This document shows, in pieces, positions 8,101 to 33,414 of a stretch of 64,000 nucleotides of DNA. The translations under genes and the position numbers were made by a program. The DNA is from Ylistrum balloti. Taxonomy: Eukaryota. The notes under the pieces are model-generated. The model had not been told where the DNA came from. It was given only the letters and a program-made list of their open reading frames with translations, and did not search any database. How positions within the stretch are numbered: position 1 is the stretch's first letter; each line of letters opens with the position of its first letter. The stretch spans positions 496,001-560,000 of the forward strand of contig NW_026782874.1 in the NCBI RefSeq assembly GCF_031769215.1, given 5' to 3'.

Positions 8101-9611
8101 TTTATATGTTTCATCATTTTTGTATATACATGTATAGCACATATTTTACGAATTCTTGTGTATATTTCCCATTTCAATTATTTACACCAAAAACTGATCC
8201 AACATCTGGTTAAATCATTTCCAATTTTGTAGTAGTCCTCCACACATGGGTTCCTCAAGAATACAAAGTCCAGTTAAAAAAGAACTGGTTCTAAAGATGG
8301 CATATTTGTTGCTGAAACATGTCAGCTTTTGAAGCTTGCTGATATCTTCTAATGGATGTTGTCCACTCGTCTCTACCTTCATCTCATTTCAATTATTTAA
8401 CCAGTTTTTTGTACCTACCCTATAAGACAATACTAAATCCATTTTTGTGAAGTGTTGACTTACCTAGAATGCCTAGATGCTGGCTTATGTTCCTGATGAA
8501 ATCAGTAGTAAACATCGACATTAGGACATTCTCAGGAATGCTGAACTGGTGTCTCACACCACCAACCGACAGCATGCTTGAGGCTTGAGCATACTGCAAA
8601 TGATGCAACTGAATTGTAGTGGAATATCAGCATATCAAAGTCAACCAGAAGTACAAAATTAATACAAATGTTCTATTTAAATAGCAAAGGCCCAGTAGAG
8701 GGCCAACAGATTCCAGGCTCAAAACAAGTGGACAGGCATATTACATCAATAGAAAATATAGTTTATCAGCAGAAGGTATTTCAGGTCTAACTGCAATACA
8801 ATAGCATAAATACTGTAATACAGTTAAATTGGTCTGCTTATTACAAGATACTCTGGTTGTTGCTAATCTTCAAATCATCATAGCAGCGTCTAGTTTTGAC
8901 ATGATAAAGCATGACTAAATATCTCCTTAATGTTTATTTCATAATCTTGATACACATGTCTGTAAGTATGAGTATGTCATCAAATTAATTTGGAAGACCA
9001 TAATTTTGATGAACAAACCAAACAAAATGCCTTTTTCTGTAAGAACAGTTTTAGCCTTTTAATCTAGCAATAAATTATATATTCATACTGGCTATGTTCT
9101 TTATAATTTCCAATCCACACACCTATGAGATGGTCTCCTTTAAAGATATTGCTCAGTCATGTCATTAATTAACAGATTTGTATATTTAATAATGGTAACT
9201 TACACTAGAATCCCGTTCTATGACTGTCACGCTGAGACCTTTGCGGCTTTGTTTCCTGATCCAGAATGCTGCTGCTGAGCCGACCAGTCCCCCACCAATA
9301 ATAGCAATGTCTGATTGCTTTGGAACAAATGTGGAATCACTCTCATTACCTTTACCAATGATTATACCTTTTAAAGCATTTCCTGCACCTGTTCCATGTT
9401 CGGGATGAAGCTCAGACTCATGTGAATATTTGGGAGACTGACTTTTCCTAACGTTGCTGTCTTTTGAGGTAACTTTATTTGTTTTACTGTTGAAGACATC
9501 TTCTCCGTTGGTACACATATAACGTGATACACATGACCAGAACTGTGAGTGATATATCCTGTCCTTTCTCAGCACATTGTTGGTGACTTTCTTGAAAATT
9601 CTGGCTGACAT
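2117..9611 (-). CDS. FOXRED1: FAD-dependent oxidoreductase domain-containing protein 1 (mitochondrial complex I assembly factor), complete, 9 coding exons, 508 aa
   Basis: Exons 9611-9204, 8593-8464, 7165-7066, 6509-6415, 5480-5320, 3773-3628, 3247-3112, 2635-2531, 2362-2117. All are GT-AG, phases are consistent, total 1527 nt. Motifs: Rossmann [104 protein letters not shown]. The basic, hydroxylated N-terminus looks like a mitochondrial presequence. Confidence 0.95.
4830..4925 (-). mobile_element. 5' terminal fragment of a HINE-like (Helentron-associated) element in FOXRED1 intron 5
   Basis: Minus strand reads TTTCAGCTCACCTGAGCCTAAAGGCACATACGAGCTATTG, the same AGCTCACCTG terminal motif as the element at 39835-41555. 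Confidence 0.5.
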
Positions 9612-9779
9612 TATCTTCAATAAAAATAAAGCAAAACATTCCAAATCCAACACTTAAATGTCTTTCACTAGTTAGTCAACACTGAAATGTCTTTAAAAGT
9701 CAATCTTTCTTTTTTTTAAAAAAAAAAAAAAAAAACTAGATCTGCAAGGTAAACTGTATAAACCATTGCCTGCATACTG

Positions 9780-13678: not shown

Positions 13679-15111
13679 CTGTACTACGCGGATTCATTCA
13701 AAAGTTTGCAAACAATTTTTTTTCATACCCTTATGAAACTTTAAAAAATGACATCAACGCTTATAATTAATTTTAAAGTACAGTTAGTTTGACACAAACC
13801 GGAAGTCGAAGGTGAAGATCAAAGGTTTCAGTGAGCCTTTGATGTTGCCGGGGAAAATAGTTCCGGCGAAGAGGGGGCGTGGCTTATTATTTTTTTTTCA
13901 TAGAGATATGAATTTTTTTAGACCAATCAGATTGCAGCATTTTGTATGGGAGGGGGGGGGAAAGAAAAAATAATTATAATGAATTTTCTTATTTTTAATC
14001 AAACAATTCCTCTTTTAGTATGTGACCTATATGTACCGGTAGATATCACTCCCTAGATTTTATTATATGCATGTAAAATTTTGCGATTGATTTACTTGAT
14101 TGACTTTAATTAAAAGTTGCAAAAATCAATTGTAAATTACATGTTGTACCATTTGAAATAATCACTGGCTATAGTTGATAGGGGCTTGTACTTTTGTCGA
14201 ATTCAAAATCAATTTAAAGAACGCATAGTTTTAATACGATGTACTCTCTCATCAGCTGGAAACTGTTCCAAACCATGTTCTGAGTCTCTCCCAACAACCA
14301 GCTAAGACGTGGATAGTCTTGTGTGAACGGAAACAATTTCACGGTAGAGCAGAAGGAACAATAGTACAACATCCTATGTTCTATTGTAATCGTGCTCTGT
14401 CTATCCACGTTATTATGACCCTATCAATGTCACTAAGCCGTGGGAAGTACACTTGGATACAGACAATATTAGAGTGCCCTTAATGATGTACACCGATGAC
14501 CTTCCGTGACCTGCCAACGTCCACTTATAGCTGTACATGGTATTGCAATGTTCTACTATGTTCTTGTGACTACTACCAAAGTTCTACCTATATTACTGTA
14601 CATACATCCATTCACGATCAACAATGCGTTCTTACTACGGCTACCTTACATGTCATCATGAGTCATATTGTTGCCCAAACCAACAGACATGTTCTAGAAA
14701 TTTATCACATTTTGTCACCTCAGCTTAAAGCAGTTGAAAGTGAACATGGTGGCCATACAACTTCCAAAGAGAGAGTGCCCAAGTTTTACCTGAACGTGTC
14801 AGGCCTTGTATAGGTACCAGAACGTGCATGTGTAGCTAAGTCATTCGTTGTACTTATCGTGGCTTTATGTTATACAATGTTGCTATTGATACGAGTTGTT
14901 ATAGTAAAACTTATATTTTTGCAAATTATGCCTTTTTTTATTTCACGACTAAGACCGTCGTTGAGCGACCTACTGAAAAAAAATTCTCGCCATGTTTATA
15001 TCATATAAATGTAAGATCTAAAATAAAACGAGGAACAGTGGTCACCAAGCATACACTATTTGTAATGGAAAGCAAAATATCAAGATATCAAAAAAACACG
15101 AAGTTGATTTT

Positions 15112-18100
15112 TCAGCCGCCGATCTGATTGTCGATAGCCAGACTACCATCGACACACGTGGAGGTGATGGGATCAAAAAAGTCCAGTCCACTGTTGGTAC
15201 ACGACTGCAGGTACATGTGTCCGGTCAGGTCGCATTGGATGTAGTGATGACGGTCACCAAGAACAGGGAAGTACAGCTTCATTTCGCGAATATGGTTCTC
15301 GTCACAGGGCGCTGTGAACACGGGACAGTTTCCACAGAAAGGATATGCTCCAGTCACTGATGGTGTGTAACCAATAGGAAATCCGGCAGTTGGTGACCCT
15401 GGCCCCTGGGCGGAAGGGTTAGTGACTGCAGCTGGCGCCCCGTCACATGCTCCAGGAGCAGCTGTAGGAGGTACAAACGTGTTTGGATTTACGCATGACT
15501 GTGATGATTGTTGAAAGTAGAAATTTGGCGGGTTACACTGACGTTGGAACGATTCATGCCAGAGGTCACACTGAATGTACATAGTTGGGTCACATGGGTA
15601 CGTGTACAGTAACGGATCGTCCGGGGCTCTCATACGACAAGGATTAGCAAAGTTTGAGGGGACGATACAGGTCAACTCATGTTGGTCCCATTCTTCTCCC
15701 TGAGGACACGGTCGGACCCACGCTTTGCCCCACACGTCGCAATGGATGTACTTGGTCACATCAGACGGATAAGTGAAGAAAAACTTATTCGCTAAGATTG
15801 CTTCCACTGAACAAGGATTTGCGAGTGTTGTGGACAGCGGCTTTCCATGAGTAACACAAGGCGTGTCACCTCCAACACATTGCTTACACGCGTCGTAATA
15901 GGATTCATTTTGTGGACACTGTACAACATACAGTTTGCCCTGGTTGTCGCACTCAAGGTACTTGGTAGGCTCATTAGGGTGTGGAAATTTAGTTATTCCG
16001 GCAAGTAGGGTTTCCTTCGTGCAGATGTTGCCATATCCCCAATGTTCTGTTGTATAGAAATAAAATGATACTTTCAGATTCATGAATTTAACTAGAATAT
16101 ATTGTAGCATATCTCATTTAGAATTCAACTTAACCTTATCAGTTACACAAACTGACAATATCATCTGAAAAAGGTTGTTTTCATTCATATTCTATGGTAC
16201 TTCATTCTATCAACGTGTGTCGCAATATTGTAGTAAATAAAGTACTTATAAACAAGTGATAATGACTGAGCATTGTTGAAGACACAGACATAGTTTATAT
16301 TTTCTATTACATCCGTGTTAATTACCTTTGCAGTCATCTGGACACTTGATTTGTACACCATTCTGGTAGCACTTTATCTCTGTAAAAGAAATCATCTTTT
16401 TATCCCTGGTGTCAAAAACACTCCCTCTTGAACAGAAAATATCTAGATTATTTTGTAACGTACTTGTCAGACAAAATAAGATACGTAAATTATTCGTATA
16501 TGGTTAGTGTATAAAACAATGAAATTTCCCGTCCGTTCGTTTATACACACAAATATAACTATATGATAAACGATTAAATACTATTTTGCGGCGTTACCAT
16601 GGTCACGATGGTCTCCAGTGTACGGCGTCACATTGATGCTACAACCTCTGGTCCCATTGGTCAGTTTGAGTGCATCCTCTAGACTCATGAAGAGTGTCTG
16701 GGTAGTGGTGGTATTTCGGAACTTGATTCCTAGTTCGGCAGCCTCGGTTTGAGAGATCGTTTCGTAGTAAGAATTTCCGGGGAATGGAGTTCCGAAGGCC
16801 GTGAATAATGTTATTTTACCGCAGGTCACGTTAGTCTGCATACACAGAACAGAAAATATGTACCGGTGTTGTTCAGTATGTATTAACATAACATAAACAG
16901 CAAGAAGTCAACCAACAGCAATCTTGTCTTCTTTTTTCATTTCAATAGAAAAAAATTGTATTATGTGATTGAAATTTAAATTAATGCGACTTTACCTCCA
17001 CTGTAACACCTCCTGGTGGCGTAATGACAGCAAGTGAAGGACACTCCTCCATCACACATGTGTAGGTGTGGTTCATTTTAATATATAAGGGAGCTGTTAA
17101 ATATAACCAAAATGATAATAACAGTATTACATTAAAAAGAAATACTGACATGTACACCAAATCAAACTCCAATCAAGAGCGTTATATAAAACAGGGAAAT
17201 GAGAATAAAACCAGAGAATCCGGAATTTTTTTCAACTTTTTATATTCCCCCGTATAGTCAAGTAAGGCATAGTCCAAAAGGTTAGCAAATGAAATCTGGT
17301 GTAAGACAATGCTACCATTCAGCATACATGTCAGCCATGGACACATTCATTTCAAGGTATTTCAATGAGAAAATGCTTTTGGTAAAAAAACTATTCTATT
17401 ATTTTTGTGTGAGATACATAAATTAAAGTTAACGATTGTAGTTACTGTCTATTTTCTGACATATACAGAACTGGCCATTCAACCAACAAATACTAATCGG
17501 CACAATCTAGATAGGCCTTACCTTTACAGGTCTTCTCTTGGATCTCTTGTTTCAGCGCCGTCAGGTCGGTGAAACCTGACACCGTCATCACGTGTGTACA
17601 GGATGGACTCGTGGCTATGGTGTTGAGCTCGGCGTGATTGATATGGCTGCCTACCCCAATTGTGAAAGTGACAATATTATTGGCGTGTATTGCCTCAGCA
17701 GAATGCATAGTGTTCAGCCGGTCATTGGATACACCGTCTGTAATCACGATAAGGACCTTCACCGCATCCGCCCGGCTTCCATGGGAATTCTGAAAAGCAC
17801 ATGTTTACCCATATAAGGCTTTTGTTAACGGTTGACTTTGGTACTTGTTCAAGTCTTCTAACCTCTCTAACCAACCGACGGTCAAGAGTGAACGGCCAAA
17901 ACCATGGCAGTGACTATTGCTGAATAACCAAGGTTAGGCAGATTTATTGAATATCATTTCAGTTTATATTGCATAGGCTCTGATTGTACGTTTTTCTAAA
18001 GATACTTAAAGTTACATATGTATAACACAAATTACAAAAATTCAAGAACAAAGCTTTCAAGTGCGTGCGTATACACATGCATAACATAATAACGGGATAG

Positions 18101-19709
18101 TACAGAAACTGTACTTTACCAACAATACCATTTGCTGAGGTAGAGGCGGTATTAAGTATTATGAATCAACATATATCGTGTACTGCTCTGAAGATTCAGG
18201 CACAGACATTATTGTGAGCATTAATCTCGCGAAATGTTCTAGTTATTGCAGTAAGAGATTACCAATGTATTTCGCATATGCATGTTGGTTTACATTGCAA
18301 GTGAAAATACGGTAAGGACAAACATTATTAATGTGAAATATAGAAACAATGGGAAAATGTATTTATAAACAAACTACCTACCTGGAAGACGTCCGTCAGT
18401 GCTTTGTTGAGTGCTTCGTCTGTGGCAGTAGTACCGCTATCGAAGGGTATATTGTCTATAGCTGTGGACACGTCACTTTTGCTGCCGTATGTGTTCAGAT
18501 AAAACCGCGTTACAGCATGTGTTGAGTACGTCACCATAGCGACCCTGGTTTTGTCTGGAGACACCGGAAAGTCATTGACGATGTCCTGAATGAACATTTT
18601 TGATCTTATGTTGTCGTCTAGTGATAAACTGTTTGACTGATCCATGACAAATACCAGGTCGATCTTCTTTGTGTTTGAACATCCTACGGCAGAAAAAAAT
18701 AATACCAAGTATTCTATGTGATAAACAGAATATTTTCAATTACAAATGACATTTGATTAAGCGCAACATCGGTTCGGAACATTATATGACGTGTTTCATT
18801 ACAGAGTCTGTAAAGCGACTGGTCTCAATATTTAACTTTATGGGGAACACACAAACGTACCCGCTATCCCTAACAGCAATCCCAAACAAACATTATTTTT
18901 CTAACAGAACAAACATAATTATCTCTATGGTGGACATGTGCTCGGTTTACCTTCGGCTAGGAGTTCGGCTAGATTAGTGAAGTTGTTTCCACCCATACTC
19001 AGAAAATAGTTGGAAAAAAACTGAGCCTGGTCCTCGACCCGCCAGCCCACTCCTCCGTGTATCTTTGTATAGAGAGCGGCAGCTATTCCAGAGTACAGTG
19101 GCTTCCTCAGATCCACCCAGTTTACCGCACCCCAGTCTATGTTGAACTTCTCGGCAAGCAGGTCATACTCCTTGAGCAGCTGATTACTGTATTTCGTTTC
19201 CAGGAATTTAGCAAGGCTTAACTAAAACAAAAATCAGGAACACTAAGTTCAAGTCTCGTCTGTCTAGGAAATAAATGAAGGTATTCCTTTAAAAAAAGAT
19301 ACAATACTTTCGATATTCTATTTGAAGGCTGTAATCTAGTAGGGTTTTCATGATAATCTTTGAGATTTACAATTTTGAAGATTGTCAAAACAGCTGTTAT
19401 TTCGTTTAATTTCGGAAAAGAAAAATGATAAATTGTATTATATCTTGTTTTCTTGCCAACCTGCCATATGCCACCATCAAAACCAGGACGGTACGTCTTT
19501 GGGTCCGTTCCGTCATATGATTGGACGTATGCAAGTCGTCTTAGGAAGCCTTTGTCGTCCGCATACAGGCAAGACTCCCGGATCCTGGAGACAACAGCCT
19601 CCACCACATGGGCGCCGTTACCCCCGGGCTGTGTCGTTTGGTCTAACCCGAAGGTACCAATTATCACCCCAACACAAACTACTGACACACATACTCCTAT
19701 AACATTCAT
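15112..19709 (-). CDS. Gene A: secreted lysozyme-like domain (Glu>Gln) + VWA + beta-rich domain + 4 chitin-binding-type repeats (Pif97/BMSP-like), 8 exons, 804 aa
   Basis: Exons 19709-19461, 19221-18951, 18683-18382, 17789-17522, 17093-16996, 16835-16598, 16379-16326, 16046-15112. All are GT-AG and in phase, total 2415 nt. Hydrophobic leader MNVIGVCVSVVCVGVIIGTFG. VWA has DLVFVMDQSNS, TAT and VITDG. Four repeats of the form C..(F/Y)P(H/Y)P..Y(I/L)xCD..G......CP..(W/F/Y)......C. AATAAA at 14942-14937. Confidence 0.9.
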
Positions 19710-22545
19710 CGCGGCAAATGAATTAAGAAACAATGTGAAGTAAACGTATGTTATTTCTTATCAAAAACTTCCTGGTAAAGTGCGTCTGTGGATTGCCATA
19801 TTCACTGCATAGGCGACAAAGGAAACAATAGGTTTGGCACGAGTCGGTTTATCTTATGTATGACTGAGTCGCGTGCATGCATTATAGTGATCGTATTTGT
19901 TTATGAGCTTTATTTCAATATATCAGTAAATCACGCTACAGATGAACTGTACTTATATGAGTCATGCATGTTATGTCATTTTTGAAAAAAAAAATTAAAT
20001 AGATTATTTATATATACCTTTTTCTGCTATAAGTTTTAAGTTTTAACCATCTTATATCACTACATGTATCATAGACAGCTGAAAGTAATGAAACAGTTTT
20101 TTTTTAATTCTAGCCAAGCCAATTTTCAATTTATTCAAAGAGAAACATTGAACGTTTATTTCATAAAATTGTATATCAAATCCCTTTTATGCAATATATT
20201 ATAGAACATATTCATTATGTATCTTATGTAGTAAATCTCCTTATAATGTATAAGATAGTCATTTGCTTTACAGGAACATTAGATATATTATGAATTTCAT
20301 GTTTTTAATACACATTATCGTGTGAAATATACTTTACACTACTTTATATTTCCCTCGGTCCCCACCCCAACCTTAGGTCTCAGTGTTGTAGGCCAATCCC
20401 ATCCTTAAAGAGTCTTAGAAGGGCAAAACAAATGCACACAGCTGTTTAATTATTTGGCTGTAGTGTATCCAATTTGATATTTGTATTGAAAGGAGCTATC
20501 AATCTCTGCATCTTTTGTATAATCTTCGAACAATTTTAATATGACGTTCGACTTATTCGACGATCTATCAACTTGTAAATTTGTTGTTGTTGTTCCGATT
20601 CTTAACTCAATTTTATAATGTGACAAGGCTACTAAACAAAGTATCATTGCTGATGTCGTCGAAGAAGTAAGGAGAAACGTATCCTCCCTTAACACGTGAG
20701 TTTTCTTTCTTTTTCTCTGTATGTGATCTCCGTATAGTCACAATACCTTTGTTCATGCCTTACTCTCTTGTTAGGAATTTTAGTTTATTGCTACGGTTTT
20801 GTCAATATGTTAGTTATTTTGTGTTGTGAATTTTTTTCATGATAATCTGGCGGTATCATTTTATGATAAGAAAATATAATGATAAAAGCAATTTCCGATG
20901 TGTATTTGTAAATCTACATTTAGCATTAAAGATAAGATAACGGATTCTACATGTGAAGCCATTGGCTGTATTTGTAAGCAGAGAAACCATTCTCGATGAA
21001 TAAATGAGAACATGATGCTAACTTCCATGGATTACTAGTAATTGTCGATCAGTAAAACATATTCTTTCACAGAAGGTTTACAGACCTTCGATTTTAAACT
21101 AACGGTTATACTTTGTGAAATTTCTATAATTATTTTACATATATGTGTAACTACTTTCGGGAACTAATATTCCTCACTATCAAACATCTTGCAAAATGGC
21201 AGACTTTTTCTACTACAGAAATGACCTTTCGAAGGACGATTATACTGATAGTAACCTGTTCGTTCCAAGGTAATACGTTTTGCGCGTGATGACGTGTGTA
21301 GTTTTAATACTATGTAAGGCTTTATCTTGATAGACTAGCCCGCCTATAATAAGGTATTGTACTTACTGTTAGTCACGTAATAGTGACACTGATTATGTAC
21401 AGACTTAAAACAGATCAGCGTGAAATGTTTACTTTTTATGTATCATTTAGTCTTATTCTTAAATAAACAAATACTGGTGAATTCATCTAGAAAAGTACCA
21501 GGGATCAGCGCAGGAAAAGCTGTGCACTTTCATAGTTGCATGTTTGGCAGACTTATTTCGTTTATGCAATGAGAGTTGCACATTGTGATAAAACAAAGGC
21601 CGTCTTACGTTTCGCACAGACTCACGTAAATGATATAACGATTTTGTGGGGAAGACTATCATACATTTCCCGTTAAGTTTTAAAGTTTTATAACTCATAT
21701 GCTATGAAATAAGCACGACTTCGATAAGCACATAATTTACAACCTTCGAAGGAAATCAGATGAAAATAAAAAGAATAGTTTACTTTATAGGTTTCGTTAA
21801 TTAATACCAAACAGTTATGACTTTTACTACAGTTTTTCTTATACGTAGCAGGATTACGAAATATAATTGAAAGTATAGTACGAACTATCTAAATAGTTTT
21901 GTGATATGGCAATGATATTAGGGAAAAAACGAACAATCATTCATAGATTATTTATATTGAGTGTATAATCTGTTTCGTTTATTTTCAATTTTAATCAAGA
22001 TGTTTTAACTGTTGTTGTTTTCCTGTAATTTTCAAAGGGAATTTGAAAGAAAATTGAGCGATTATCATATTTCATTCAGAGTATAGTTCAAAGGTCGATT
22101 GAGCTTTAATTACAGGAAGTTGATGGAAAATATGCTCATGTTTTTTTATCTTCTTAACTTCAGTTCGATTTTGCCTTATCTTGTGTTACATGGAGTTCAA
22201 TATCTTTAAATATAGAAGCATAGATATCTTCAACGTTCAAGCCATAAGTGAAACACGCATTATGTTGTAAAAAAGGTTTATTACTTACAATTAATTTACT
22301 TAATAATTCAATATCTATCTAATACTGAAATACGTTTTTCTATGCCACATCTTTGATATTTCTTTGTTGTTGTTATCAGATGTAAAAGTTAAATACATTT
22401 GTCACAAAGATGCCTCTGAGTCTTCAGATACGTAACAACAGTGTGTTGTGTTCCAGATCTCGATTGGTGTCTACAAAACCAGATCTCTTAGAGACAAGTA
22501 AATAACATTTTCGCCAATAGTCTATGACTCAAAGATATCAAATTC

Positions 22546-24962
22546 TTATTTTTTGCCTACTACTGGGACGGGAACAGTGCTCATGACGAAAAGGCCCCTT
22601 GGCACGCAGTTGAGGATGTCTTGGCGCCAAATGAAGTATGGTTTGCAAATTTTCTCGAAAGCATCTCCGTACTGGTCACAGTGAATATACTTCTGGGGAT
22701 CGCTGGGGTGAGGATAGAAGAAAAGGTCAGGAACGGTTCCACAAGGCTTACTGTTAGATCCAAATGCGCCCTTTGTTGGGTCAACAACTACCTCTCTGTA
22801 GAGGCAGGTTAGAGTGGCCTGGTCCCAGAAGTGATGAGGTTCGCAGAACTTCACCACAGCTACGTATGGAAGGTTATAACATTCAATATAGGCCTGATCA
22901 TCGTTAGGATAGGGAAAGAAAAAGAGTCCATTGAGAATATTTTCTGGTGTACACGGATTGCCAGTCTGAACTACAGCGTTCGTAGGTCTTGGTGTAACTG
23001 ATGGCAGAGGGGTCATAGTGGTTCTGGGAAGGGTGAAGGTCATCGGCATACCCGGTATGCACGTCTGTGCCTGTAGGTCAAATATTTCCATAAATGGACA
23101 TAAAACTTCAAACACATTACCATTGCCATCACAGTAAAGGAATCGGTCGTTTCTCAATGGATGAGGAAAGATCTGGATGCCGCTGCTTGAACAGGGGTTG
23201 GGGGCTGTAAATAAAAATACATGACATGGATTATGTAGGCCAATTTGTTAGACATTCAAGTATCTGTCTTGTCTATACATGATTGTACGCCCATTTCATC
23301 AATATTGTCGGTTACGCGAGAACTTAGACGTTCACGTTATTCAGAAATGGAGCATACATTTTGTATTTCTATATATCCTCGATGAAAATGTACCATCAAG
23401 CGCGATATTCGTCTGCATTATAAGTTAATTGAAAGGGTTAGTTAATTTTGATAGAAATGCATTATTTGATAAAGAAAATATTAAAATTATTAGATTCTCT
23501 ACGTCTTTTCGCTTCTTTCGAACCATACGCTGCTTTCTTTCAGTTATTGATATATGTACATTTCGAAAATTATTTAAAGGTATGTCTTCATCTATCAATT
23601 CATTATAGTATAGGGTATATACCAGGTGGTACTTACAGTATGGAGTAGGCACAACCATGTACTGACTACCGAAAAGAGTTTGAGCCGAGCAGTTGACAAT
23701 GATCCTTCCAGCTTCTATACACAGCAGGTTATTATCTACAAATTTAAAGTTTGTTTTGTTTTATTTGAACAATGTCTATTAGTTCATCTTGACTTTATCA
23801 CACACATATAACAACTGTCAAATATGACGCCAGTAGATGTCTAACATTATCACAAACAACGTAGTGCTCATTATTCGATTCTGGCTAAATCGCATAAAAC
23901 GCTTCTTTTACTTGTGGTACTATGATACATATAAAGCTGTCTTTAACTTCTAGATATGTAACTATGACACATATAAAGCTGTATCTAACTTCTAGATATG
24001 TAACTATGACACATATAAAGCTGTATCTAACTTCTAGATATGTAACTATGACACATATAAAGCTGTGTCTAACTTCTAGATATGTAACTATGACACATAT
24101 AAAGCTGTCTTTAACTTCTAGATATGTGACTATGACACATATAAAGCTGTATCTAACTTCTAGATATGTAACTATGACACATATAAAGCTGTATCTAACT
24201 TCTAGATATGTAACTATGACACATATAAAGCTGTCTTTAACTTCTAGATATGTAACTATGACACATATAAAGATGTCTTTAAATTCTAGATATGTAACTA
24301 TGACACATATAAAGCTGTATTTAACTTCTAGATATGTAACTTCATATAGATATGTAACTATGACACATATAAAGCTGTATCTAACTATGACACATATAAA
24401 GCTGTCTTTAACTTCTAGATATGTAACTATGACACATATAAAGCTGTCTTTAACTTCTAGATATGTAACTATGACACATATAAAGCTGTCTTTAACTTCT
24501 AGATATGTAACTATGACACATATAAAACTGTCTTTAACTTCTAGATATGTGACTATGACACATATAAAGCTGTATCTAACTTCTAGATATGTAACTATGA
24601 CACATATAAAGCTGTATCTAACTTCTAGATATGTAACTATGACACATATAAAGCTGTATCTAACTTCTAGATATGTAACTATGACACATATAAAGCTGTA
24701 TTTAACTTCTAGATATGTAACTATGACACATAAAAAGCTGTCTTCAACTTCTAGATATCTATGTCACATACAAAGATGTCTTTTACCTAGTTGTTAATAT
24801 CTAACTTTATTACATAAAAAGCTGTGTTCTTGTTGTGAATCCAAACTACATATCTGTCAGAACAAGAGTGTGTACTCTGGGCTCTGGTCTCGACAATATC
24901 ACTTTATGCGCTTTATGGAGGGACAATATCACTAACAATGATTCAATGATGTAATATGAATA

Positions 24963-24999
<37 letters not shown>

Positions 25000-27900
25000 C
25001 TATTAATATATATAAGGAATGTATTGAAGTGGTGACTGCTTTTAACAGAGACACCTTTTACGATGTGCATTGAAAAGTAAATCTTCAAGGTTTTCGTTGA
25101 TGACACATATTATCTGCCATACGTCATTGGTAACTAGCATTCCATCCAGCAAACTATATCGTTGTCCATGTTATTCCGCTTATTCCTTTCTTAATTACAT
25201 TTCAATGAAGGAAATTAGGATTTAATTCAGCCTCACTCTTATATTGAATACTGATAGCCTCACCGCCAGTCATACACTTACATGGTCTGATGTTGTTTCC
25301 TTCCTCTACAGTGATGTTAAAGTTCCCGGCACAAGTCTTTGTGGGATAAGTGGACATAACTGCCAAAGCCACTGACCGGTTACCACGGACATAAAACGAC
25401 TGTCCAGCGTTGATGTCGGCAATTTTGTAGAACTCATTCAATACGGGACTTGGATTTGCTGACGTCAGAGATCCAAACACGGACACAGTACCATCAGTAG
25501 GGGTGACCTAAGATAAAATTATTTCCAAGATTATGAAAATTCACCATTTGCATGACATTTTAATATTTAGCTATTGTCTTCGTTATTCATCTCGACATTT
25601 ATTTTATTGCGCTATGATATGCAATGTATTTAGAATGTAAATATTGTAACGTAGTAATTGTATCAGTAGAATTTACCTGGGACAGTGTTGTAATGATCTG
25701 AATAATCAAAGACAATTACAGACATAACAGTTGATCATGCTGTAATGTTTGGTCCTATTAGGACGATGACAGGTATCATAACGTTAAACGTTGTTCCTGT
25801 TGTTACTTTTGCCTCTAAATGAACAATGATCAATTTCCTATCGTTACAGTTGATGTCATTATGCTTGGTTCTATACGGACAATAACTGGTATCCTGCAGT
25901 TACAGTTGTTCCTCATGCTATGTTTAGTACTATAAAGACAATATCTGTCTATTTACTGTGAACCAACAGGACAACAACCGGTGGCCTATCGCGACGTTAA
26001 TCCTTCTGTATTGTTTTGTGCCATTAGTACAATAACCCGTGATTTACCGCGACAGTGATTCCTGGTGTATTGTTTTGTGCCATTAGTACAATAACCGGTG
26101 GCCTATCGCGACAGTGATTCCTGGTGTATTGTTTTGTGCCATTAGTACAATAACCGGTGGCCTATCGCGACAGTGATTCCTGGTGTATTGTTTTGTGCCA
26201 TTAGCACAATAACCCGTGATTTACCGTGACAGTGATTCCTGGTGTATTGTTTTGTGTGGTTAGGACAATAACTGGTGGCCTATCGCGACAGTGATTCCTG
26301 ATGTATTGTTTTGTGCCATTAGGACAATAACCCGTGACCTACCGTGACAGTGGTCCCTGCTGTAACGTTGGGTAGGATCTGTACGTTGATGTCACTGCCA
26401 CAGTTATACTGGTAGTTGTTTGGAGTCAAAATAGCAGCAGCTTTAACATTAGAACATTTAAAGTGAAAGTATCAATCATTATTTGGAATAATTTGAAATT
26501 TCGGGTTTAAGAATGTATTCATTTGTCAATCACTTTGCACAAATTATTTTCATTTTTGCGCTTCCGTTTTTTATTATGATAATCTTACTATCAATATCCG
26601 TCATGTCGTGGCCTTTTCATTTTGTCATGTTACGTAAAGTAATGCCTTGTTCTAGTCGTGTCATAGCGATAACGATTTCAGTTCCGAGAGGATTTGATCT
26701 AACGTTTTAGACAGGTACAGAGTGTCCAAACCAGTACATATTTCATTATTTTAAGGTCAAACTCATTATAACACTCCATGTTAAATTAGCAGCAACTTTT
26801 ATTTCAATCATCACAAGTTTCTTTGTCATTTATATCACATTATTTCTCTATGGATTTGATACAACATAAATAGGTTATCGTACTTTACGAGTTGGTCCGT
26901 ATTATATAATTAAAGCCAAGTCCATGGTAACCGTTACTTCCTATAGAGAGTTAAAGAAAAAAACGTATTGGAATGGAAGACTATCCCAAATTACCGACGT
27001 ATTCATTCATTCCTCTTCCTATCGATTAACTCAATGCACTAAGATATAGAATTCCAATCCACTCTACTTGTTATCTGTTTTGCCATATAATGTTAAATGC
27101 ATTTCAATTTTTTTCGAACTTTTCTACCACAGACATAACATTTCACAAATATTAATTCTAAACATATCACACTCATCATAAAAATTTTTCACATCATGCT
27201 GTCTTAGGGTGTTTAGTTAGAAAACCTGTTCATCTGATATTCAAGATATATTCCTATTTTCAGTAATCGTCATATAGTTCATTTTCACCGAGTTAATGTT
27301 TTTCTTACCTTTGCATGAAACACTCTGGATCTGAGTTTTTAGACTGTCTAGATCAGCGTAGCTGTTTAAGATCTGCGAGTGAGTACAGCTTGGACTACTT
27401 GCAATCCCGTCTAATTCGATCTGTAAGCAAGTGCGTTATGTATTAAAGAATAGTTCCAACTAAAACTACCGACGATGCTTTCTTCTTCCATATAATTAAT
27501 AATTTATTTAGTTAATTAGAACCATTGTCGATGCAGTACTATATACTGGGATAATTTCACCCCAGGTTATTTTCGCCAAAGTACCACACAGTCTCGCCTC
27601 GTGTTTATTTCGTCCCCGAGGATTATATAAAAAAAATTATACAAATGGAATATATTTTAAAGTCGCCTTTCTTGTTCCTTAGCGAAAAGGGCACAATTCA
27701 AATGGGGGCAAAATGCCCATGTAGAGTATATCATTTTTTATATACATACAACATACACTAAATTGAAATTCACACGTGCATATGATATATCGGAGAAAGA
27801 GATTTACTCTTATTATTCTTTTTTCACTTAATGTACTTTTTTCAAATACTACAACATGAAGTAAATAAAACCTTTCTATTCCATATAAACATGTTACCAA

Positions 27901-30900
27901 AGAGGTTAAAACATGTTACCAAAGATGTTAAGAATCGTCTACCTTGTTGACATACTGTGTGACTCCCAGCGTAAATATGGTAATACCACTCAGCCTGGCG
28001 TTGTTAGCAGCATTCAGTGTGTTTACCGTATTTTCTGATCGACCATCAGTGATCAAAATCATAACCTGTATAAGAATATCAGTATACAATATTCAGAGAA
28101 ACCTATATTTTCCTGATTTGTTTTATCACAGACATTGATTATATGTTATTTTTCAATTCTTTCTAAAAACCAACACTTCATTTTCTCTTCGTCTTTTGAC
28201 ATCTCTTCTTACTATAGTTGTACCGTTATAGTGAAATATGTCTTACAGCGATGATAGTCAATGTATTAGAAACATACTGCAGGACAATGTATTCCTTGCA
28301 TTATGTTTGATTTAAGCTAAGACACTTCTTCATATATATATATAATTAATATCGCCAAGTATATGCTTTCATTCCGCTGACAGGGTTGGCAGTGATGTGA
28401 GAAAACATATTACAAATGCTGTATTGCTTCTGAACGTGATATGATAAGGGAAAGAATTATATGGAGGGAAAATCGGGGGTTTTTTCTCTTTTTTTTTTTT
28501 TTTTTGTAAAACATGTCCTCTATCAGTTAAGTCTACTTGTAAGCTTTTTGGTTGTTGGAGTTGAATTAAATTTCCTATAAAACATCAAGAAAATACCAAT
28601 ATGTCAACATAATCATGATGTAAAATCAGTTCCATTATAACTAAGACAGAACAATAAAAAAGAGGATTTCTTTTTTTTCCCTTTCTTCGAGATTATTAAA
28701 AGTCGTCAGAAGGATCAGATTGTAATATTCTGGTATGAGATACTACCTTGGCCGCACCATTCCGTGCACCGTTGACTGTTGCGAAGACTTCATTAACGGT
28801 TTTATCAATGGCGGCAGCAGTGTTGGTACCGCCTGGGCTGTATATAATACCATCTACCGCCTTCTTCACTGCATCTTTTGTGTCGAATTGGTTCAGCAGG
28901 AACGAGGCCGAAACAGCTGTACTAAATTCCACCACGGCCACACGAGCAGTCTGTGGTCCGATATCAAACTGGTCGACTACATCCTTTACAAATTGCTTTG
29001 TGATATCAAAATCGGATGGAGAAAGACTTGCTGAGCTGTCCACAACAAAAACCAAGTCAATAGCATTGGTGCTGCGGCATCCTAGAAATAAGATAAAACA
29101 TGTCATTACTTTTGTTTAGGAAAACGAAGATTTGATAAATATTTGAAACTTATTACATACAAAAATGCCTATATATAAACTAATTTCATTATGATGTCAT
29201 TTGCTTACGTAACGGACTGTCTACGGTCTCTTGGTTAAAAGATATGCCTGTTACGCTGGTTTACTTGGTGACTCTTTTGTTGTTAATCGTGTCGTTGTTT
29301 GGGAACGTGATATTATTTACTAGGATTTAACAAGATTTACTTAACGATGACGTTGATTACGGAAATGAAGCTAACTCATATTCTCATCCATTTTTCAAAA
29401 TCATTGTAAATCTTCTTTTGGCAATATTTTGTCTCCATTTCATCGATTTCGATTTTGAATTATGATCATGTTGGCATTTCTGCATTTATCAACTGATATC
29501 AAACAAGATAATAAAAATGGTTGTAATGGTATGCAGAGGTAGTATGGCACAGCTATGCCTCGGAAAAATAAATTACACATATGTATCGAATCTTGTTTGT
29601 TTTTTTTGTTAAAAAAGAGTGACTGATAGCTTACCTCCTTGTAACTCATTGACTGCTTTGTAGTATTTGTTGGCGTCGAAAATAGTGTGTTTTGTGGTGT
29701 TAATCCAGAAAGAACTCTGTTTTTCTACGGAACTGGGGAGGACACCCGATCCAGACTTGAGAAGCGTATAGAGAGCGGCGGCCACACCAGAATACAGAGG
29801 TTTTCTTAAGTCTTCCCATTTAGCTGATGACCAATCGATTGTCAATGTGTTCCTAAGGAGAGCTCTGGCTGTGGCCAACATTACAGCTGACTGTGTCTGT
29901 TTAAACTGGTCCTCATCAATCTGTTAAAATATATATAAACATGAAAAAGAAAGAAAGCAAACAATGAAGGACTTAAAGATAGAAATAGAAAAATTGATAA
30001 GAAAAGGAAAGAACGAAATCTGAAAGACATTTGTCCGTTTTGCTAATGTTTCTATTGAATCGCTGTAAAAGAAAGAAATGAGGTAAAACTATTTAAATTT
30101 TAGTGTCTTGTTCGAATCTGAGAGTTATCCATTCTTTGAGGAGAATGAGTAAACTGAAAGAAAATGCACCGGCTGATAGTTACTTTCATTCTCAATGAAT
30201 GTATAGCAACATCAATACTTTTATTTCGTTTTGAGTAATATGTCGTTAAAAAATTCCAAACGGAAATGGACTTTCACGTGCTACCGTGTTACTGTCTAAG
30301 GTCTGCGGTAAATGGACTTCCACGTGTTACTGTCTAAGGTCTGCGGTAAATGGACTTCCACGTGTTACTGTCTAAAGTCTACGGTAAATGGACTTCCACG
30401 TGTTACTGTCTAAAGTCTACGATAAATGGACTTCCACGTGTTACTGTCTAAAGTCTACGGTAAATGGACTTCCACATGTCACTGTCTGAGGTCTACGGTA
30501 AATGGACTTCCATGTGTTACTGTCTGAGGTCTACGGTGAATGGGCTTCCACGTGTTACTGTCTAAGGTCTACGATAAATGGACTTCCACGTGTTACTGTC
30601 TAAAGTCTACGGTAAATGGACTTCCACATGTCACTGTCTAAGGTCTACGGTAAATGGACTTCCATGTGTCACTGTCTGAGGTCTACGGTAAATGGACTTC
30701 CACGTGTCACTGTCTGAGGTCTACGGTAAATGGACTTCCACGTGTTACTGTCTGAGGTCTACGGTAAATGGACTTCCACGTGTTACTGTCTAAAGTCTAC
30801 GGTAAATGGACTTCCACGTGTCACTGTCTGAGGTCTACGGTAAATGGACTTCCACGTGTCACTGTCTGAGGTCTACGGTAAATGGACTTCCACGTGTCAC

Positions 30901-32727
30901 TGTCTGAGGTCTACGGTAAATGGACTTCCACGTGTTACTGTCTAAAGTCTACGGTAAATGGACTTCCACGTGTCACTGTCTGAGGTCTACGGTAAATGGA
31001 CTTCCACGTGTCACTGTCTGAGGTCTACGGTAAATGGACTTCCACGTGTCACTGTCTGAGGTCTACGGTAAATGGACTTCCACGTGTTACTGTCTAAAGT
31101 CTACGGTAAATGGACTTCCACGTGTCACTGTCTGAGGTCTACGGTAAATGGACTTCCACGTGTCACTGTCTGAGGTCTACGGTAAATGGACTTCCACGTG
31201 TTATTGTATAAAGTCTACAGTAAATGGACTTCCACGTGTTACTGTCTAAAGTCTACGGTAAATGGACTTCCACGTGTTACTGTCTAAGGTCTACGGTAAA
31301 TGGACTTCCACGTGTTACTGTCTAAGGTCTACGATAAATGGACTTCCACGTGTTACTGTCTAAGGTCTACGGTAAATGGACTTCCACGTGTTACTGTCTA
31401 AGGTCTACGGTAAATGGACTTCCACGTGTCACTCTCTAAGGTCTACGGTAAATGGACTTCCACGTGTTACTGTCTGAGGTCTACGGTAAATGGACTTCCA
31501 CGTGTTACTGTCTAAGGTCTAAGCATGGCACTGAACATTTTGAGACGAGTTGTGTGGCACTCTTGGTCATTGTATAGATTACACAACGTAACGTAAGGAT
31601 TGCTTGCCTGAAACTCGTAGCCGAACGAGAAAATACCTATATGTGAGCATAATCTCATAAACCAAACTCAAATTCAATAAAACTAGGGCAATATATGAAC
31701 AAAGAAAATAATATCACGGAGACTGCAGAAAGAGTGCAATTAGAATAAGACCTGCATCTCTTGAAACCCCGTGTCAGTCAGCTGATGACATCTTTCATGA
31801 AATGCTGGCACCATTCCGCATGGTAGAAGTATGAAATTGGGCTTTACAGCTATTGCACGTCCATAAGTACAATTCTAGTTAGTGTTAAATCAAAAGGTTA
31901 TTGATCAGCGATACTCCACTGTAACTGCCTTGTTGAAATAATTGTTTAAACAGTTACATTTGCTATCATTGGTATCAGATAGGATGGTACAAAATGGAAC
32001 ACATCTTAATGTCTTTCTAGGGTTAGGTATATGTACGCTGGTAAGATATGGTAATATAGCGCAAGAACGTCTCTTAAGCTCGATCGATTGAGCATCAGAC
32101 GTGTAAGCAAGGGGTCTCGGGTTCGAATCCTAGCGTAGGCATTGAAATAAATATTGAGGCAAATAATTATTTAAACTATATGATACAGTTGTTTTGTCCT
32201 TCTAGAACTCGTTAGTGATGCTTAGGGTGTACATTTTGAAGCCAATCAGGCGATTGAGAAAAATCCAAAGTGATCGAAAGAAAAGTCAACATCTAGACGG
32301 TGAGGTATACTAGCCCAACAATTCATAATTCAATAAGTTTCGTTTTTACATGTTTTATAAATAGTATTTTTCTATTGATGAAACATGCTAGATTTGAACT
32401 TTACATTTCCAAAACGCAGCAAAGGGATATATATCTGTAATATATACAGTAAATGTCATTTCCATCCTGTGACGGCTAACTCACCTGCCATATTCCACCA
32501 TTGTAGCCTACTCTGTAGGTATCGTTTGCTGTGCCGTCCTGGGACTCGACGTAAGCCAACCTGCGAAGATACAGTCTGTCGTTGGGGAATATGCAAGATT
32601 CATGGATGAGGTTGATGACAGCCTCTACCACGGCAGAACCGCTTGCTCCAGGGACTCGTGTTTGATCCTGCATCTGGCCACTACACAGATACGCCAGTCC
32701 CAAAATCAAAAATGTTCTTGAAATCAT
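22546..32727 (-). CDS. Gene B: secreted lysozyme-like domain (catalytic-type Glu retained) + VWA + beta-rich domain + 3 chitin-binding-type repeats, paralog of gene A, 9 exons, 726 aa
   Basis: Exons 32727-32485, 29920-29635, 29081-28747, 28065-27943, 27420-27309, 26440-26343, 25507-25282, 23735-23637, 23204-22546. All are GT-AG and in phase, total 2181 nt. Signal peptide MISRTFLILGLAYLCSG. VWA has DLVFVVDSSAS, GGTNT and LITDG. It shares LRRLAYV(E/Q)S.DG, GGIWQ, DLRKPLYSG.AAALY and SP.SCTH with gene A. AATAAA at 22282-22277. Confidence 0.9.
23920..24790. repeat. 42-bp minisatellite, about 20 copies, in gene B intron 7
   Basis: Unit TATGACACATATAAAGCTGTATCTAACTTCTAGATATGTAAC. It produces the repetitive 291-aa ORF (YVTMTHIKLYLTSR)n. 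Confidence 0.97.
24964..24994. repeat. (TA)n microsatellite
   Basis: Direct TA run. Confidence 0.9.
25968..26360. repeat. 59-bp minisatellite (about 6.5 copies) overlapping the 3' end and splice donor of gene B exon 6
   Basis: Successive 60-nt lines repeat with a 1-nt shift (period 59). The last unit overlaps exon bases 26343-26360. Confidence 0.93.
30261..31521. repeat. 38-bp minisatellite, about 33 copies, in gene B intron 1
   Basis: Unit CGGTAAATGGACTTCCACGTGTTACTGTCTAAGGTCTA (CGGTAAA at 30306 and 30344). Confidence 0.97.
32069..32141 (+). pseudogene. Degenerate tRNA-like sequence (tRNA pseudogene or SINE head, Thr-UGU-like)
   Basis: A-box-like AGCTCGATCGATTGAGC, B-box GGTTCGAATCC at 32120-32130 and TGT at the anticodon position. 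The anticodon and acceptor stems do not pair properly. Confidence 0.55.
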
Positions 32728-32879: not shown

Positions 32880-33363
32880 CCCGACATTCGGACAAGTCAA
32901 GACATTAACTTTCTACACATTAAATCCATTGTAATGTATCTTAAGTGTATTCTGTCAATCAGAAAAGATTTTTATCTCGTTACGCCTCTATCATAAACAA
33001 ACATTCCCCACCTATAACACTGGATAATATCCCATGATAACCTATGCAAATCAGATGGAGTCGTCAACTACACCGCAGTGCGGGAAATATTTCGATAGCC
33101 TAACTTATGGTGATTATTTGTTCTTTGATAGACCATAAGCCGGTATCTACGAAGACTGAGCACGTATTGCTGAACGCCCGTCACACTGTGGCGTCACTCC
33201 CAGTCATGTCGTGTTGTTAGTGCTGACTTTGGTGTGGTCTGGTCACATTAACCCTTCAGGCTAAACGGTGCCATCTCGTTATCTTAATGGACATTCAAAC
33301 TTTAAAATCTTATAATTAAAATAAGTAACTATTTGCCGTTGAATTTGTTCTCTAGAAGAATAA

Positions 33364-33366
33364 ATC

Positions 33367-33414
<48 letters not shown>
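33364..33414. repeat. (CAT)n microsatellite
   Basis: Direct trinucleotide run with one interruption. Confidence 0.95.

What the first reader, a model, noticed from the sequence alone, without database searches (positions are those of the whole stretch)
18951..19709. Gene A has a natural Glu-to-Gln substitution at the predicted catalytic residue
Seen: gene A reads LRRLAYVQSYDG (Q63, codon CAA at 19523-19521) where gene B reads VESQDG. The flanking motifs GGIWQ and DLRKPLYSG.AAALY are conserved and the ORF is intact. Established: E-to-Q is the standard inactivating, substrate-trapping mutation in lytic transglycosylases. Inference: gene A is a catalytically dead glycan binder retained by selection (lectin, scaffold or competitive regulator).
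Basis: partly seen in the sequence, partly recalled or inferred. Interest (0 to 1): 0.7.

Follow-up and report, generated by a model that had tools for sequence, protein, structure and literature searches.

The report
Ancient Glu-to-Gln lysozyme-like pseudoenzyme domain
A secreted scallop matrix protein starts with a lysozyme-like domain whose key acidic residue has been glutamine in scallops, oysters and mussels since their common ancestor; the rest of the domain is tightly conserved, so it most likely works as a non-cutting sugar-binding module rather than as a decaying enzyme.

Summary
Codon 63 of gene A is CAA (Gln, window 19521-19523), and the tandem paralog gene B has GAG (Glu, 32545-32547).

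- **Gene.** The window is Ylistrum balloti. Gene A is the first two exons of an 8-exon, 804-aa secreted protein (XP_060084208.1). Its order is signal peptide, an N-domain with no Pfam match, VWA, then CBM14 chitin-binding repeats.
- **Not an error.** Four other DNA runs from two studies, carrying at least two further haplotypes, all keep the codon. Their only two coding differences are synonymous.
- **Ancient.** All 16 retrieved pteriomorph ortholog sequences carry Gln: four scallops, two Saccostrea, three Mytilus and one mytilid-like transcript. The heteroconch orthologs keep Glu. The Gln clade is monophyletic (99/93), so this is one old substitution.
- **Under constraint.** N-domain dN/dS among scallops is 0.03-0.11, like the VWA domain. 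Position 63 is the only fixed difference from the Glu sister clade.
- **Fold.** AlphaFold models match only lysozyme-like enzymes (MltE, Z 9.0-9.3). A weak profile alignment (P 0.008) puts position 63 on the catalytic Glu of E. coli lytic transglycosylases.

"Retained by selection" is well supported. "Catalytically dead" is a strong inference. "Glycan binder" is untested, and no family member has a measured activity. An earlier scan note covered gene B's domain.

The parts
19521..19523 (-). Gln63 codon (CAA) of gene A, at the position of the family's conserved Glu
   Evidence: Unchanged in 4 other DNA runs. CAA in Ylistrum and Pecten, CAG in Argopecten and Mizuhopecten.
19461..19709 (-). Gene A exon 1: signal peptide and the first half of the lysozyme-like N-domain (..AYVQS..GGIWQ), ending in phase 0 before a GT donor
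18951..19221 (-). Gene A exon 2: second half of the N-domain (IDW..DLRKPLYSGIAAALY..), with donor G|GTAAAC in phase 1. The in-frame stop 26 nt further on lies in the intron.
18382..18683 (-). Gene A exon 3: VWA domain, part 1
   Evidence: PF00092, residues 182-354, E 4.9e-42
17522..17789 (-). Gene A exon 4: VWA domain, part 2
16996..17093 (-). Gene A exon 5 (Cys-containing linker)
16598..16835 (-). Gene A exon 6
16326..16379 (-). Gene A exon 7
15112..16046 (-). Gene A exon 8: CBM14 (peritrophin-A) chitin-binding repeats and the stop codon
   Evidence: PF01607, 45.7 bits against a cutoff of 22.1
22546..32727 (-). Gene B (XP_060084215.1, 726 aa, 9 exons): tandem paralog with the same architecture that keeps Glu61 (GAG, 32545-32547). 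Its N-domain exons are 32485-32727 and 29635-29920.

Best explanation
Gene A encodes a secreted matrix-type protein with this order: signal peptide, lysozyme-like N-domain, VWA domain, CBM14 chitin-binding repeats. The N-domain belongs to a large family with no Pfam match. That family has the lysozyme / lytic-transglycosylase fold and normally carries Glu-Ser at the end of the helix that holds the catalytic acid in GH23 enzymes. On the stem of Pteriomorphia (mussels, oysters, scallops) that Glu became Gln by one G-to-C change. It has been kept ever since, while the rest of the domain stayed under strong purifying selection. The domain is therefore most likely a pseudoenzyme: it can no longer protonate the glycosidic bond, but it keeps the cleft and works as a non-hydrolytic binding module for a GlcNAc-type polymer (chitin and/or peptidoglycan) inside a multivalent extracellular protein.

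Shown: Gln is real, fixed, ancient and under constraint; the fold is lysozyme-like; the architecture is as stated. Inferred: loss of catalysis, from homology and from E-to-Q mutants of known enzymes. Inferred with less support: glycan binding.
For: - **Real and fixed.**
- **Gene model.** It threads exactly as an 8-exon, 804-aa protein with VWA and CBM14 domains.
- **Family.** 1623 representative proteins at E<=1e-3, and no Pfam hit. Position 63 is Glu in 158 of 185 domains; neighbouring G32, D52, R57, R58, G67, GGIW, P124 and S127 are near-invariant.
- **Fold.** The gene A model has pLDDT 89.6. An exhaustive search of 48,161 chains gave 50 of 50 top rows from lysozyme-like enzymes, best MltE-E64Q at Z 9.0 with 124 residues aligned. 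The same picture came from the P0001 model (Z 9.3).
- **Residue correspondence.** hhalign against five E. coli GH23 enzymes scores 23.0 (P 0.008). That beats the reversed control (8.6) and 30 column shuffles (maximum 21.2). It aligns AYV[E/Q]S with the catalytic ES (MltE E64) and GGIWQ with GLMQ.
- **Orthologs.** Gln is present in all 16 retrieved pteriomorph sequences: Ylistrum, Pecten, Mizuhopecten, Argopecten, Saccostrea cucullata (x2), S. echinata, Mytilus coruscus, M. edulis, M. galloprovincialis and two Logan contigs, P0177 and P0240. Mya, Mercenaria, Dreissena, Mactra, Potamilus and Sinanodonta have Glu.
- **Tree.** The Gln clade has support 99/93 and the bivalve orthogroup 100/99.
- **Selection.** N-domain dN/dS is 0.03-0.11 where dS could be estimated, like the VWA domain (0.04-0.07). 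Its dN equals that of gene B's Glu-bearing domain for the same species pair, 0.100 against 0.092. The Gln codon itself varies synonymously, CAA or CAG. Position 63 is the only fixed difference between the Gln and Glu clades. Of 20 SNPs, 18 are non-coding and 2 are synonymous (P 3e-4).
- **Expression of orthologs.** A0A210QBL3 was detected in Yesso scallop mantle proteomics (PMC9641012). P0177 is an intron-free 2447-nt transcript contig.
Against: - No member of this family has a demonstrated enzymatic activity, so 'catalytic residue' rests on remote homology. Each Z score of 9 is middling, the hhalign signal barely exceeds the best shuffle, and the Pfam SLT model does not match.
- Glycan binding was not tested, and I could not inspect cleft residues in coordinates.
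- No RNA run for Ylistrum was found, so expression in this species is unverified.
- dS is near or beyond saturation for several pairs, so the omega values are approximate.
- No Crassostrea, Pinctada or ark-shell ortholog was retrieved, so 'all Pteriomorphia' rests on three orders.
- Family-conserved W152 also changed, to F or Y, in the Gln clade. The change may therefore not be purely a catalytic knock-out.
Confidence: 0.6

Rival explanations
1. The whole family is non-enzymatic. The conserved Glu serves binding or structure, for example coordination of a cation or a ligand hydroxyl. Glu-to-Gln then tunes affinity or charge in the pteriomorph orthologs rather than switching off an enzyme.
For: No activity is known for any member. 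No Pfam or PDB sequence match was found. About 15% of domains lack Glu, with very varied replacements: A, V, S, L, M, K, N. Most members sit in VWA/CBM14 matrix-type proteins.
Against: Glu-Ser at the end of this helix, followed by a GLMQ-like strand, is the GH23 catalytic signature, and the alignment places it there. Short stand-alone secreted members keep Glu in 58 of 61 cases, against 87 of 110 in long fusions. That pattern is expected if the stand-alone proteins are enzymes and fused copies sometimes become binding modules.
Confidence: 0.2
2. The Gln form is still catalytically active, using another acid (for example the conserved Asp66 of the E/Q-S-x-D-G motif) or substrate assistance.
For: Asp66 is about 85-90% conserved in the family and is kept in scallops and oysters. 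The domain is as constrained as an active one would be.
Against: The Mytilus orthologs in the same Gln clade also have Asp66-to-Asn (VQSHNG) and are still conserved and transcribed. In characterised GH23 enzymes a single Glu is essential, and E-to-Q forms are deposited as inactive mutants (titles of 6ghy and 6fc4).
Confidence: 0.07
3. Gln63 is an assembly or sequencing error, a private allele, or gene A is a decaying pseudogene.
For: None found. The only gap is that no RNA run of this species could be located.
Against: The codon is identical in four other runs from two studies that carry other haplotypes. Gln is shared by 9 named species. The 8-exon ORF is intact, dN/dS is about 0.03-0.1, and the only coding SNPs are synonymous.
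Confidence: 0.01

Closest known systems
GH23 lytic transglycosylases and goose-type lysozymes (E. coli MltE, Slt70, MltC, MltD; Pfam SLT PF01464)
   Same: The fold is lysozyme-like, with best structural matches at Z 9.0-9.3 over about 125-130 residues. The family consensus has Glu-Ser at the C-terminal end of the matching helix, followed 16-20 residues later by G-[IL]-[WM]-Q. MltD itself reads VES..GIWQ.
   Different: There is no significant sequence match to PF01464. Gene A lacks the Glu. The AYNxG motif has no clear counterpart. The protein is eukaryotic, secreted, and fused to VWA and CBM14 domains. No activity is known.
Engineered E-to-Q substrate-trapping mutants (MltE E64Q with chitopentaose 4hjy, Slt E503Q 6fc4, Ralstonia GH23 chitinase E141Q/E162Q 3w6d/3w6e)
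   Same: The same substitution sits at the structurally equivalent position. Those mutants keep the fold and bind oligosaccharide without cleaving it.
   Different: Here the substitution is natural, fixed in a clade of orthologs and maintained by selection. Binding has not been shown.
Glycosidase-derived pseudoenzymes and lectins (GH18 chitinase-like lectins such as YKL-40 and Ym1; mammalian lysozyme-like SLLP1/LYZL; alpha-lactalbumin) - from my own knowledge, not tested here
   Same: The concept is the same: a carbohydrate-active fold loses its catalytic acid and persists under selection as a binding or regulatory protein.
   Different: The fold family is different and not in Pfam. The domain is embedded in a VWA-CBM14 matrix protein. 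A Glu-bearing tandem paralog and Glu-bearing orthologs in sister lineages provide natural controls.
Pif/BMSP family of molluscan shell-matrix proteins (VWA + CBM14; Shimizu et al. 2024, PMC11291548)
   Same: The protein is secreted with a VWA domain followed by CBM14 chitin-binding domains. That paper describes a bivalve subfamily (PifS1) with a long unexplained insertion between signal peptide and VWA.
   Different: Membership of the Pif/BMSP VWA clade was not tested. The PifS1 insertion is described as low-complexity and may be unrelated. There is no laminin-G domain here. Presence in shell has not been shown, only in a mantle proteome for the Yesso scallop ortholog.

Membership tests
GH23 / SLT lytic transglycosylase-goose lysozyme family | Lysozyme-like alpha-helical fold | tested here: met
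   The AF2 model of gene A residues 1-179 has pLDDT 89.6. VIA-align against 48,161 chains gave top-50 rows that are all lysozyme-like enzymes, best MltE at Z 9.0, rmsd 3.5, 124 aligned. One search gave Z 9.3.
GH23 / SLT lytic transglycosylase-goose lysozyme family | Sequence match to the family profile (Pfam PF01464 at gathering score) | tested here: not met
   Gene A has 0 Pfam families even at E<=10. Only 1 of 107 family members touches SLT (E 0.014) and 1 touches SLT_3 (E 0.025). The profile search against PDB sequences gave 0 hits.
GH23 / SLT lytic transglycosylase-goose lysozyme family | Catalytic Glu (E-S motif) at the end of the catalytic helix | tested here: not met
   Gene A has Gln63-Ser64. 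The family consensus and gene B have Glu-Ser, aligned to MltE E64 by hhalign.
GH23 / SLT lytic transglycosylase-goose lysozyme family | G-L-M-Q type motif II downstream of the Glu | tested here: met
   GGIWQ (residues 79-83) aligns to GLMQ. E. coli MltD has GIWQ.
GH23 / SLT lytic transglycosylase-goose lysozyme family | A-Y-N-x-G motif III | tested here: inconclusive
   PLYSG (124-128) resembles it, but hhalign aligned that segment elsewhere with low confidence.
GH23 / SLT lytic transglycosylase-goose lysozyme family | Cleavage of peptidoglycan or chitin | not testable with these tools
   This needs biochemical assays. No paper in the library links 'transglycosylase' with 'shell matrix proteins'.
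Pseudoenzyme (inactive homolog kept by selection) | Loss of an essential catalytic residue relative to active-type relatives | tested here: met
   Gln replaces the Glu present in 158 of 185 domains and in the orthologous heteroconch clade.
Pseudoenzyme (inactive homolog kept by selection) | Purifying selection on the inactive domain | tested here: met
   dN/dS is 0.03-0.11 among four scallops. Gln is conserved in three bivalve orders. There are no nonsynonymous SNPs.
Pseudoenzyme (inactive homolog kept by selection) | Expressed as RNA and protein | tested here: inconclusive
   Ortholog A0A210QBL3 is in the Yesso scallop mantle proteome, and a mytilid-like ortholog is an intron-free transcript contig. 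No RNA run was found for Ylistrum.
Pseudoenzyme (inactive homolog kept by selection) | Measured lack of activity while active relatives are active | not testable with these tools
   No assay data were found.
Pif/BMSP shell-matrix proteins | Secreted protein with VWA followed by CBM14 chitin-binding domains | tested here: met
   PF00092 at residues 182-354 (E 4.9e-42) and PF01607 at 45.7 bits. There is a hydrophobic N-terminal signal-like segment.
Pif/BMSP shell-matrix proteins | VWA domain inside the Pif/BMSP clade, and protein found in shell matrix | not tested
   No reference Pif or BMSP sequences were fetched. Only mantle proteome evidence exists, for an ortholog.

The most novel reading that the evidence does not exclude
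Gene A and gene B are a conserved tandem pair of enzyme and natural substrate trap. The Gln form uses an intact lysozyme-like cleft to hold chitin or bacterial peptidoglycan without cutting it. It would act as a matrix anchor or as a pattern-recognition or regulatory partner of the Glu form in the mantle or extrapallial space. The Yesso scallop ortholog rises 1.4-fold in mantle during shell-boring Polydora infestation. That would reveal an overlooked lysozyme-like enzyme/lectin system across marine invertebrates.
Probability: 0.15. Interest if true: 0.7.

Novelty: new member of a known kind. Interest (0 to 1): 0.5.

Why it matters
Nature has made the textbook E-to-Q "substrate-trap" mutation here and kept it for what I estimate, from my own knowledge of bivalve divergence times, to be more than 400 million years.

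Built-in controls are available. A Glu-bearing paralog sits next door, and Glu-bearing orthologs exist in clams and freshwater mussels. Only one site is a fixed difference between the two ortholog groups. This makes the function of a large lysozyme-like domain family with no Pfam match directly testable, with four constructs: A, A-Q63E, B and B-E61Q.

The domain sits at the start of many VWA-chitin-binding proteins of molluscs, a protein class that is central to shell-matrix research. In that literature the N-terminal region appears to have gone unrecognised. If the Gln form binds chitin or peptidoglycan, it adds a new lectin type to invertebrate matrix biology or immunity.

Tried and rejected
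- **Pfam on the N-domain** and **PDB sequence and profile searches**: nothing usable.
- **Foldseek alone** gave only E of about 0.4. VIA-align was needed.
Rejected: the exon ends at a GT donor at 18951, and the annotated 804-aa protein threads exactly.
- **Phage relatives.** One weak hit: an uncultured 636-kb phage, 31% identity over 84 aa, E 2e-3.
- **More pteriomorph lineages.** A search with the oyster ortholog found no Crassostrea, Pinctada or ark-shell ortholog. This is not evidence of absence, because of the word index and the length window.
- **PifS1 subfamily** (PMC11291548) as a possible identity. It stays a lead only, because the paper describes its insertion as low-complexity.
- **RNA editing.** A-to-I editing of CAA cannot give a Glu codon (my own reasoning).

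Full report
**1. What is in the sequence**

On the minus strand, 19709-19461 reads an ATG, a hydrophobic signal-like segment, then ..VVEAVVSRIRESCLYADDKGFLRRLAYVQSYDGTDPKTYRPGFDGGIWQ, followed directly by a GT donor. Gln63 is CAA at 19523-19521. After an AG acceptor, 19221-18951 continues in phase 0 with ..FNIDWGAVNWVDLRKPLYSGIAAALYTK.. and ends at a G|GTAAAC donor.

A tblastn of this protein against the window finds one paralog, gene B. Its exon 1 is at 32727-32485 (..LRRLAYVESQDG..GGIWQ|GTGAGT, Glu61 = GAG at 32547-32545). Its exon 2 is at 29920-29635.

**2. The real gene**

The interval in the finding covers only the first two exons.

- A profile search gave a full-length Argopecten protein (P0036). 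A second word search then returned P0175 (XP_060084208.1, uncharacterized protein LOC132563468 of Ylistrum balloti, 804 aa), which is 100% identical to gene A's N-domain.
- A spliced-threading script placed P0175 exactly on the window as 8 exons: 19709-19461, 19221-18951, 18683-18382, 17789-17522, 17093-16996, 16835-16598, 16379-16326 and 16046-15112.
- The same script placed P0204 (XP_060084215.1, 726 aa) exactly as the 9 exons of gene B.
- Pfam finds VWA (residues 182-354) and CBM14 chitin-binding domains in both proteins, and nothing in the first ~180 residues.
- The gene order B - A - DAO-domain gene is the same in Argopecten irradians, Pecten maximus and Mizuhopecten yessoensis.

**3. Is Gln63 an error or a private allele?**

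No. Logan contigs of four other DNA runs (two studies) each span 15000-19993 in one piece, with 12-14 differences from the window. They form at least two further haplotype groups. None has a difference in exon 1.

Of the 20 variable sites, 18 are intronic or flanking. The two in coding sequence are synonymous (I802, P606). Coding sequence makes up 48% of the interval, so this shortfall has binomial P = 3e-4.

**4. What the N-domain is**

- *A large unannotated family.* A profile of the first hits found 1623 cluster representatives at E<=1e-3, and 340 at E<=1e-30. The family has no Pfam model and no relative detectable by sequence in the PDB.
- *Conservation.* In 185 aligned domains, position 63 is Glu in 158, Gln in 9, and A/V/S/D/other in the rest. 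S/T64, D66, G67, GGIW(79-82), W113, P124 and S127 are near-invariant.
- *Fold.* AlphaFold2 models are confident: P0001 has pLDDT 82.9 and gene A residues 1-179 have pLDDT 89.6. Foldseek alone is weak (E about 0.4), but its top rows are all MltE, GH23 chitinase, phiKZ gp144 and Slt70. VIA-align gives Z 9.3 to MltE (130 aligned, rmsd 3.7). For the gene A model, an exhaustive comparison with 48,161 representative chains returns 50 of 50 top rows from lysozyme-like enzymes (GH23, GH73, GH19, GH22, GH24, GH124, Rpf). The best is MltE-E64Q at Z 9.0. Each Z is middling by the tool's own note. The exclusive composition of the list is what convinces.
- *Residue-level correspondence.* I fetched five E. 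coli GH23 enzymes (slt, emtA, mltD, mltC, mltF) and ran hhalign against the 107-sequence family alignment. The local score is 23.0 (P 0.008). The reversed control scores 8.6, and 30 column shuffles score at most 21.2, with mean 13.6. The confident core aligns AYV[E/Q]S with the catalytic xIES (MltE E64, Slt70 E505 of the precursor) and GGIWQ with GLMQ. MltD itself reads VES..GIWQ. In both models the residue lies at the C-terminal end of a helix (H55-64 in gene A), as the catalytic Glu does in lysozyme-like enzymes (my own knowledge).

The link is remote but consistent. I rate "position 63 = catalytic-acid position" at about 0.8.

**5. Is Gln kept in relatives?**

Yes, and the pattern is clean.

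- *Gln:* Pecten maximus, Mizuhopecten yessoensis, Argopecten irradians, Saccostrea cucullata (two copies), S. echinata, Mytilus coruscus, M. edulis, M. galloprovincialis and two Logan contigs, one of which (P0177) I checked and found to be an intron-free transcript.
- *Glu:* the closest proteins of Mya, Mercenaria, Dreissena, Mactra, Potamilus and Sinanodonta.
- *Tree:* a maximum-likelihood tree of 60 N-domains recovers a bivalve orthogroup (100/99). Inside it, the pteriomorph Gln sequences form one clade (99/93), next to heterodont and unionid Glu clades. This mirrors bivalve phylogeny and implies one Glu-to-Gln change on the pteriomorph stem.
- *Codon use:* the codon is CAA in Ylistrum and Pecten and CAG in Argopecten and Mizuhopecten, so the amino acid is maintained through synonymous turnover.
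- *Fixed differences:* across the whole domain, position 63 is the only site fixed differently between the 7 Gln and 8 Glu orthologs. Family-conserved W152 is F or Y in the Gln clade. Mytilus additionally has D66N and R57V.

**6. Selection**

I built codon alignments from the threaded CDSs of four scallops. By the Nei-Gojobori method, N-domain dN is 0.06-0.10 and dN/dS is 0.03-0.11 for the five pairs where dS could be estimated. The least saturated pair, Pecten-Mizuhopecten, has dS 0.61 and omega 0.11.

The VWA domain of the same protein gives 0.04-0.07 and the remainder 0.05-0.11. For Ylistrum against Argopecten, dN of the Gln-bearing domain (0.100) equals dN of gene B's Glu-bearing domain (0.092). 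dS is saturated for several pairs, so omega is approximate. The low dN is robust.

**7. Expression**

The run search found no RNA run for this species.

- The Yesso scallop ortholog A0A210QBL3 is listed among mantle proteins that rise 1.40-fold during Polydora infestation (PMC9641012).
- P0177 is encoded without introns on a 2447-nt Logan contig, so it is a transcript.

**8. Context in the family**

Loss of the Glu is recurrent. The 60-domain tree needs 10 state changes. It includes an oyster EGF-containing clade with Ala and a heterobranch clade with A/V/S/L/M/K/N.

Loss is also commoner in long multidomain proteins (23 of 110 domains) than in short stand-alone ones (3 of 61). Fisher P is 0.007, not corrected for relatedness. 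This fits a picture in which stand-alone members are enzymes and fused copies are sometimes converted to binding modules. It is suggestive only.

**9. Interpretation**

Gene A's N-domain is best read as a lysozyme-like pseudoenzyme, maintained for a non-catalytic role in a secreted VWA/CBM14 protein.

- Purifying selection, antiquity and fold are shown.
- Loss of catalysis is inferred from homology and from the behaviour of E-to-Q mutants of MltE, Slt and a GH23 chitinase. Their deposited structures turned up in my own searches.
- Glycan binding, and any interplay with gene B, are hypotheses.

The main rival is that the family is not enzymatic at all. The literature library holds no paper linking transglycosylase with shell matrix proteins. 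A 2024 survey of Pif/BMSP proteins does not mention lysozyme and notes only a "long insertion" before the VWA domain in one subfamily.

**10. Limits and housekeeping**

- The window has no N stretches.
- Read laying was given 5001 letters.
- Earlier scan notes had already named the scallop origin and a lysozyme-like reading of gene B's domain. I re-derived both independently here. I did not verify the claim of bacterial and phage members beyond one weak phage hit.

Noticed in passing
window 23919-24783, 25971-26364, 30285-31521: Three minisatellites lie inside gene B introns: 42 bp x20.6, 59 bp x6.7 and 38 bp x32.6. The last 22 nt of the 59-bp array overlap gene B exon 6 (26343-26440).
   Followed up: partly
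gene A residue 152 (exon 2, window 18951-19221); orthologs P0178, P0234, P0236, P0245: Besides E63Q, the Gln clade changed the family-conserved Trp152 to Phe or Tyr. Mytilus orthologs additionally carry D66N (VQSHNG) and R57V, a further loss of charged residues around the former active site.
   Followed up: partly
window ~9189-9653 (-); loci L001-L003: A DAO-domain (FAD oxidoreductase) gene lies downstream of gene A. The order B - A - DAO is conserved in Argopecten, Pecten and Mizuhopecten.
   Followed up: partly
proteins P0023-P0172: The N-domain family is large (1623 representatives at E<=1e-3) and has no Pfam model. Some members carry two or three tandem copies. Stand-alone ~200-aa members nearly always keep the Glu (58 of 61), against 87 of 110 in long fusions.
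   Followed up: partly
tree (Aplysia, Plakobranchus, JGI contigs; Saccostrea P0108/P0213): Other clades lost the Glu independently. A heterobranch clade has A/V/S/L/M/K/N at the position, and an oyster EGF-domain-containing clade has Ala.
   Followed up: no
LR756504.1 441864-442127 (uncultured 636-kb phage): This is the only phage-collection match to gene B's N-domain: 31% identity over 84 aa, E 2e-3. It is too weak to confirm the phage members claimed in an earlier scan note.
   Followed up: no
window 33282-33449 (-): An ATG/CAT trinucleotide run gives a poly-Met ORF upstream of gene B. It is probably a microsatellite.
   Followed up: no
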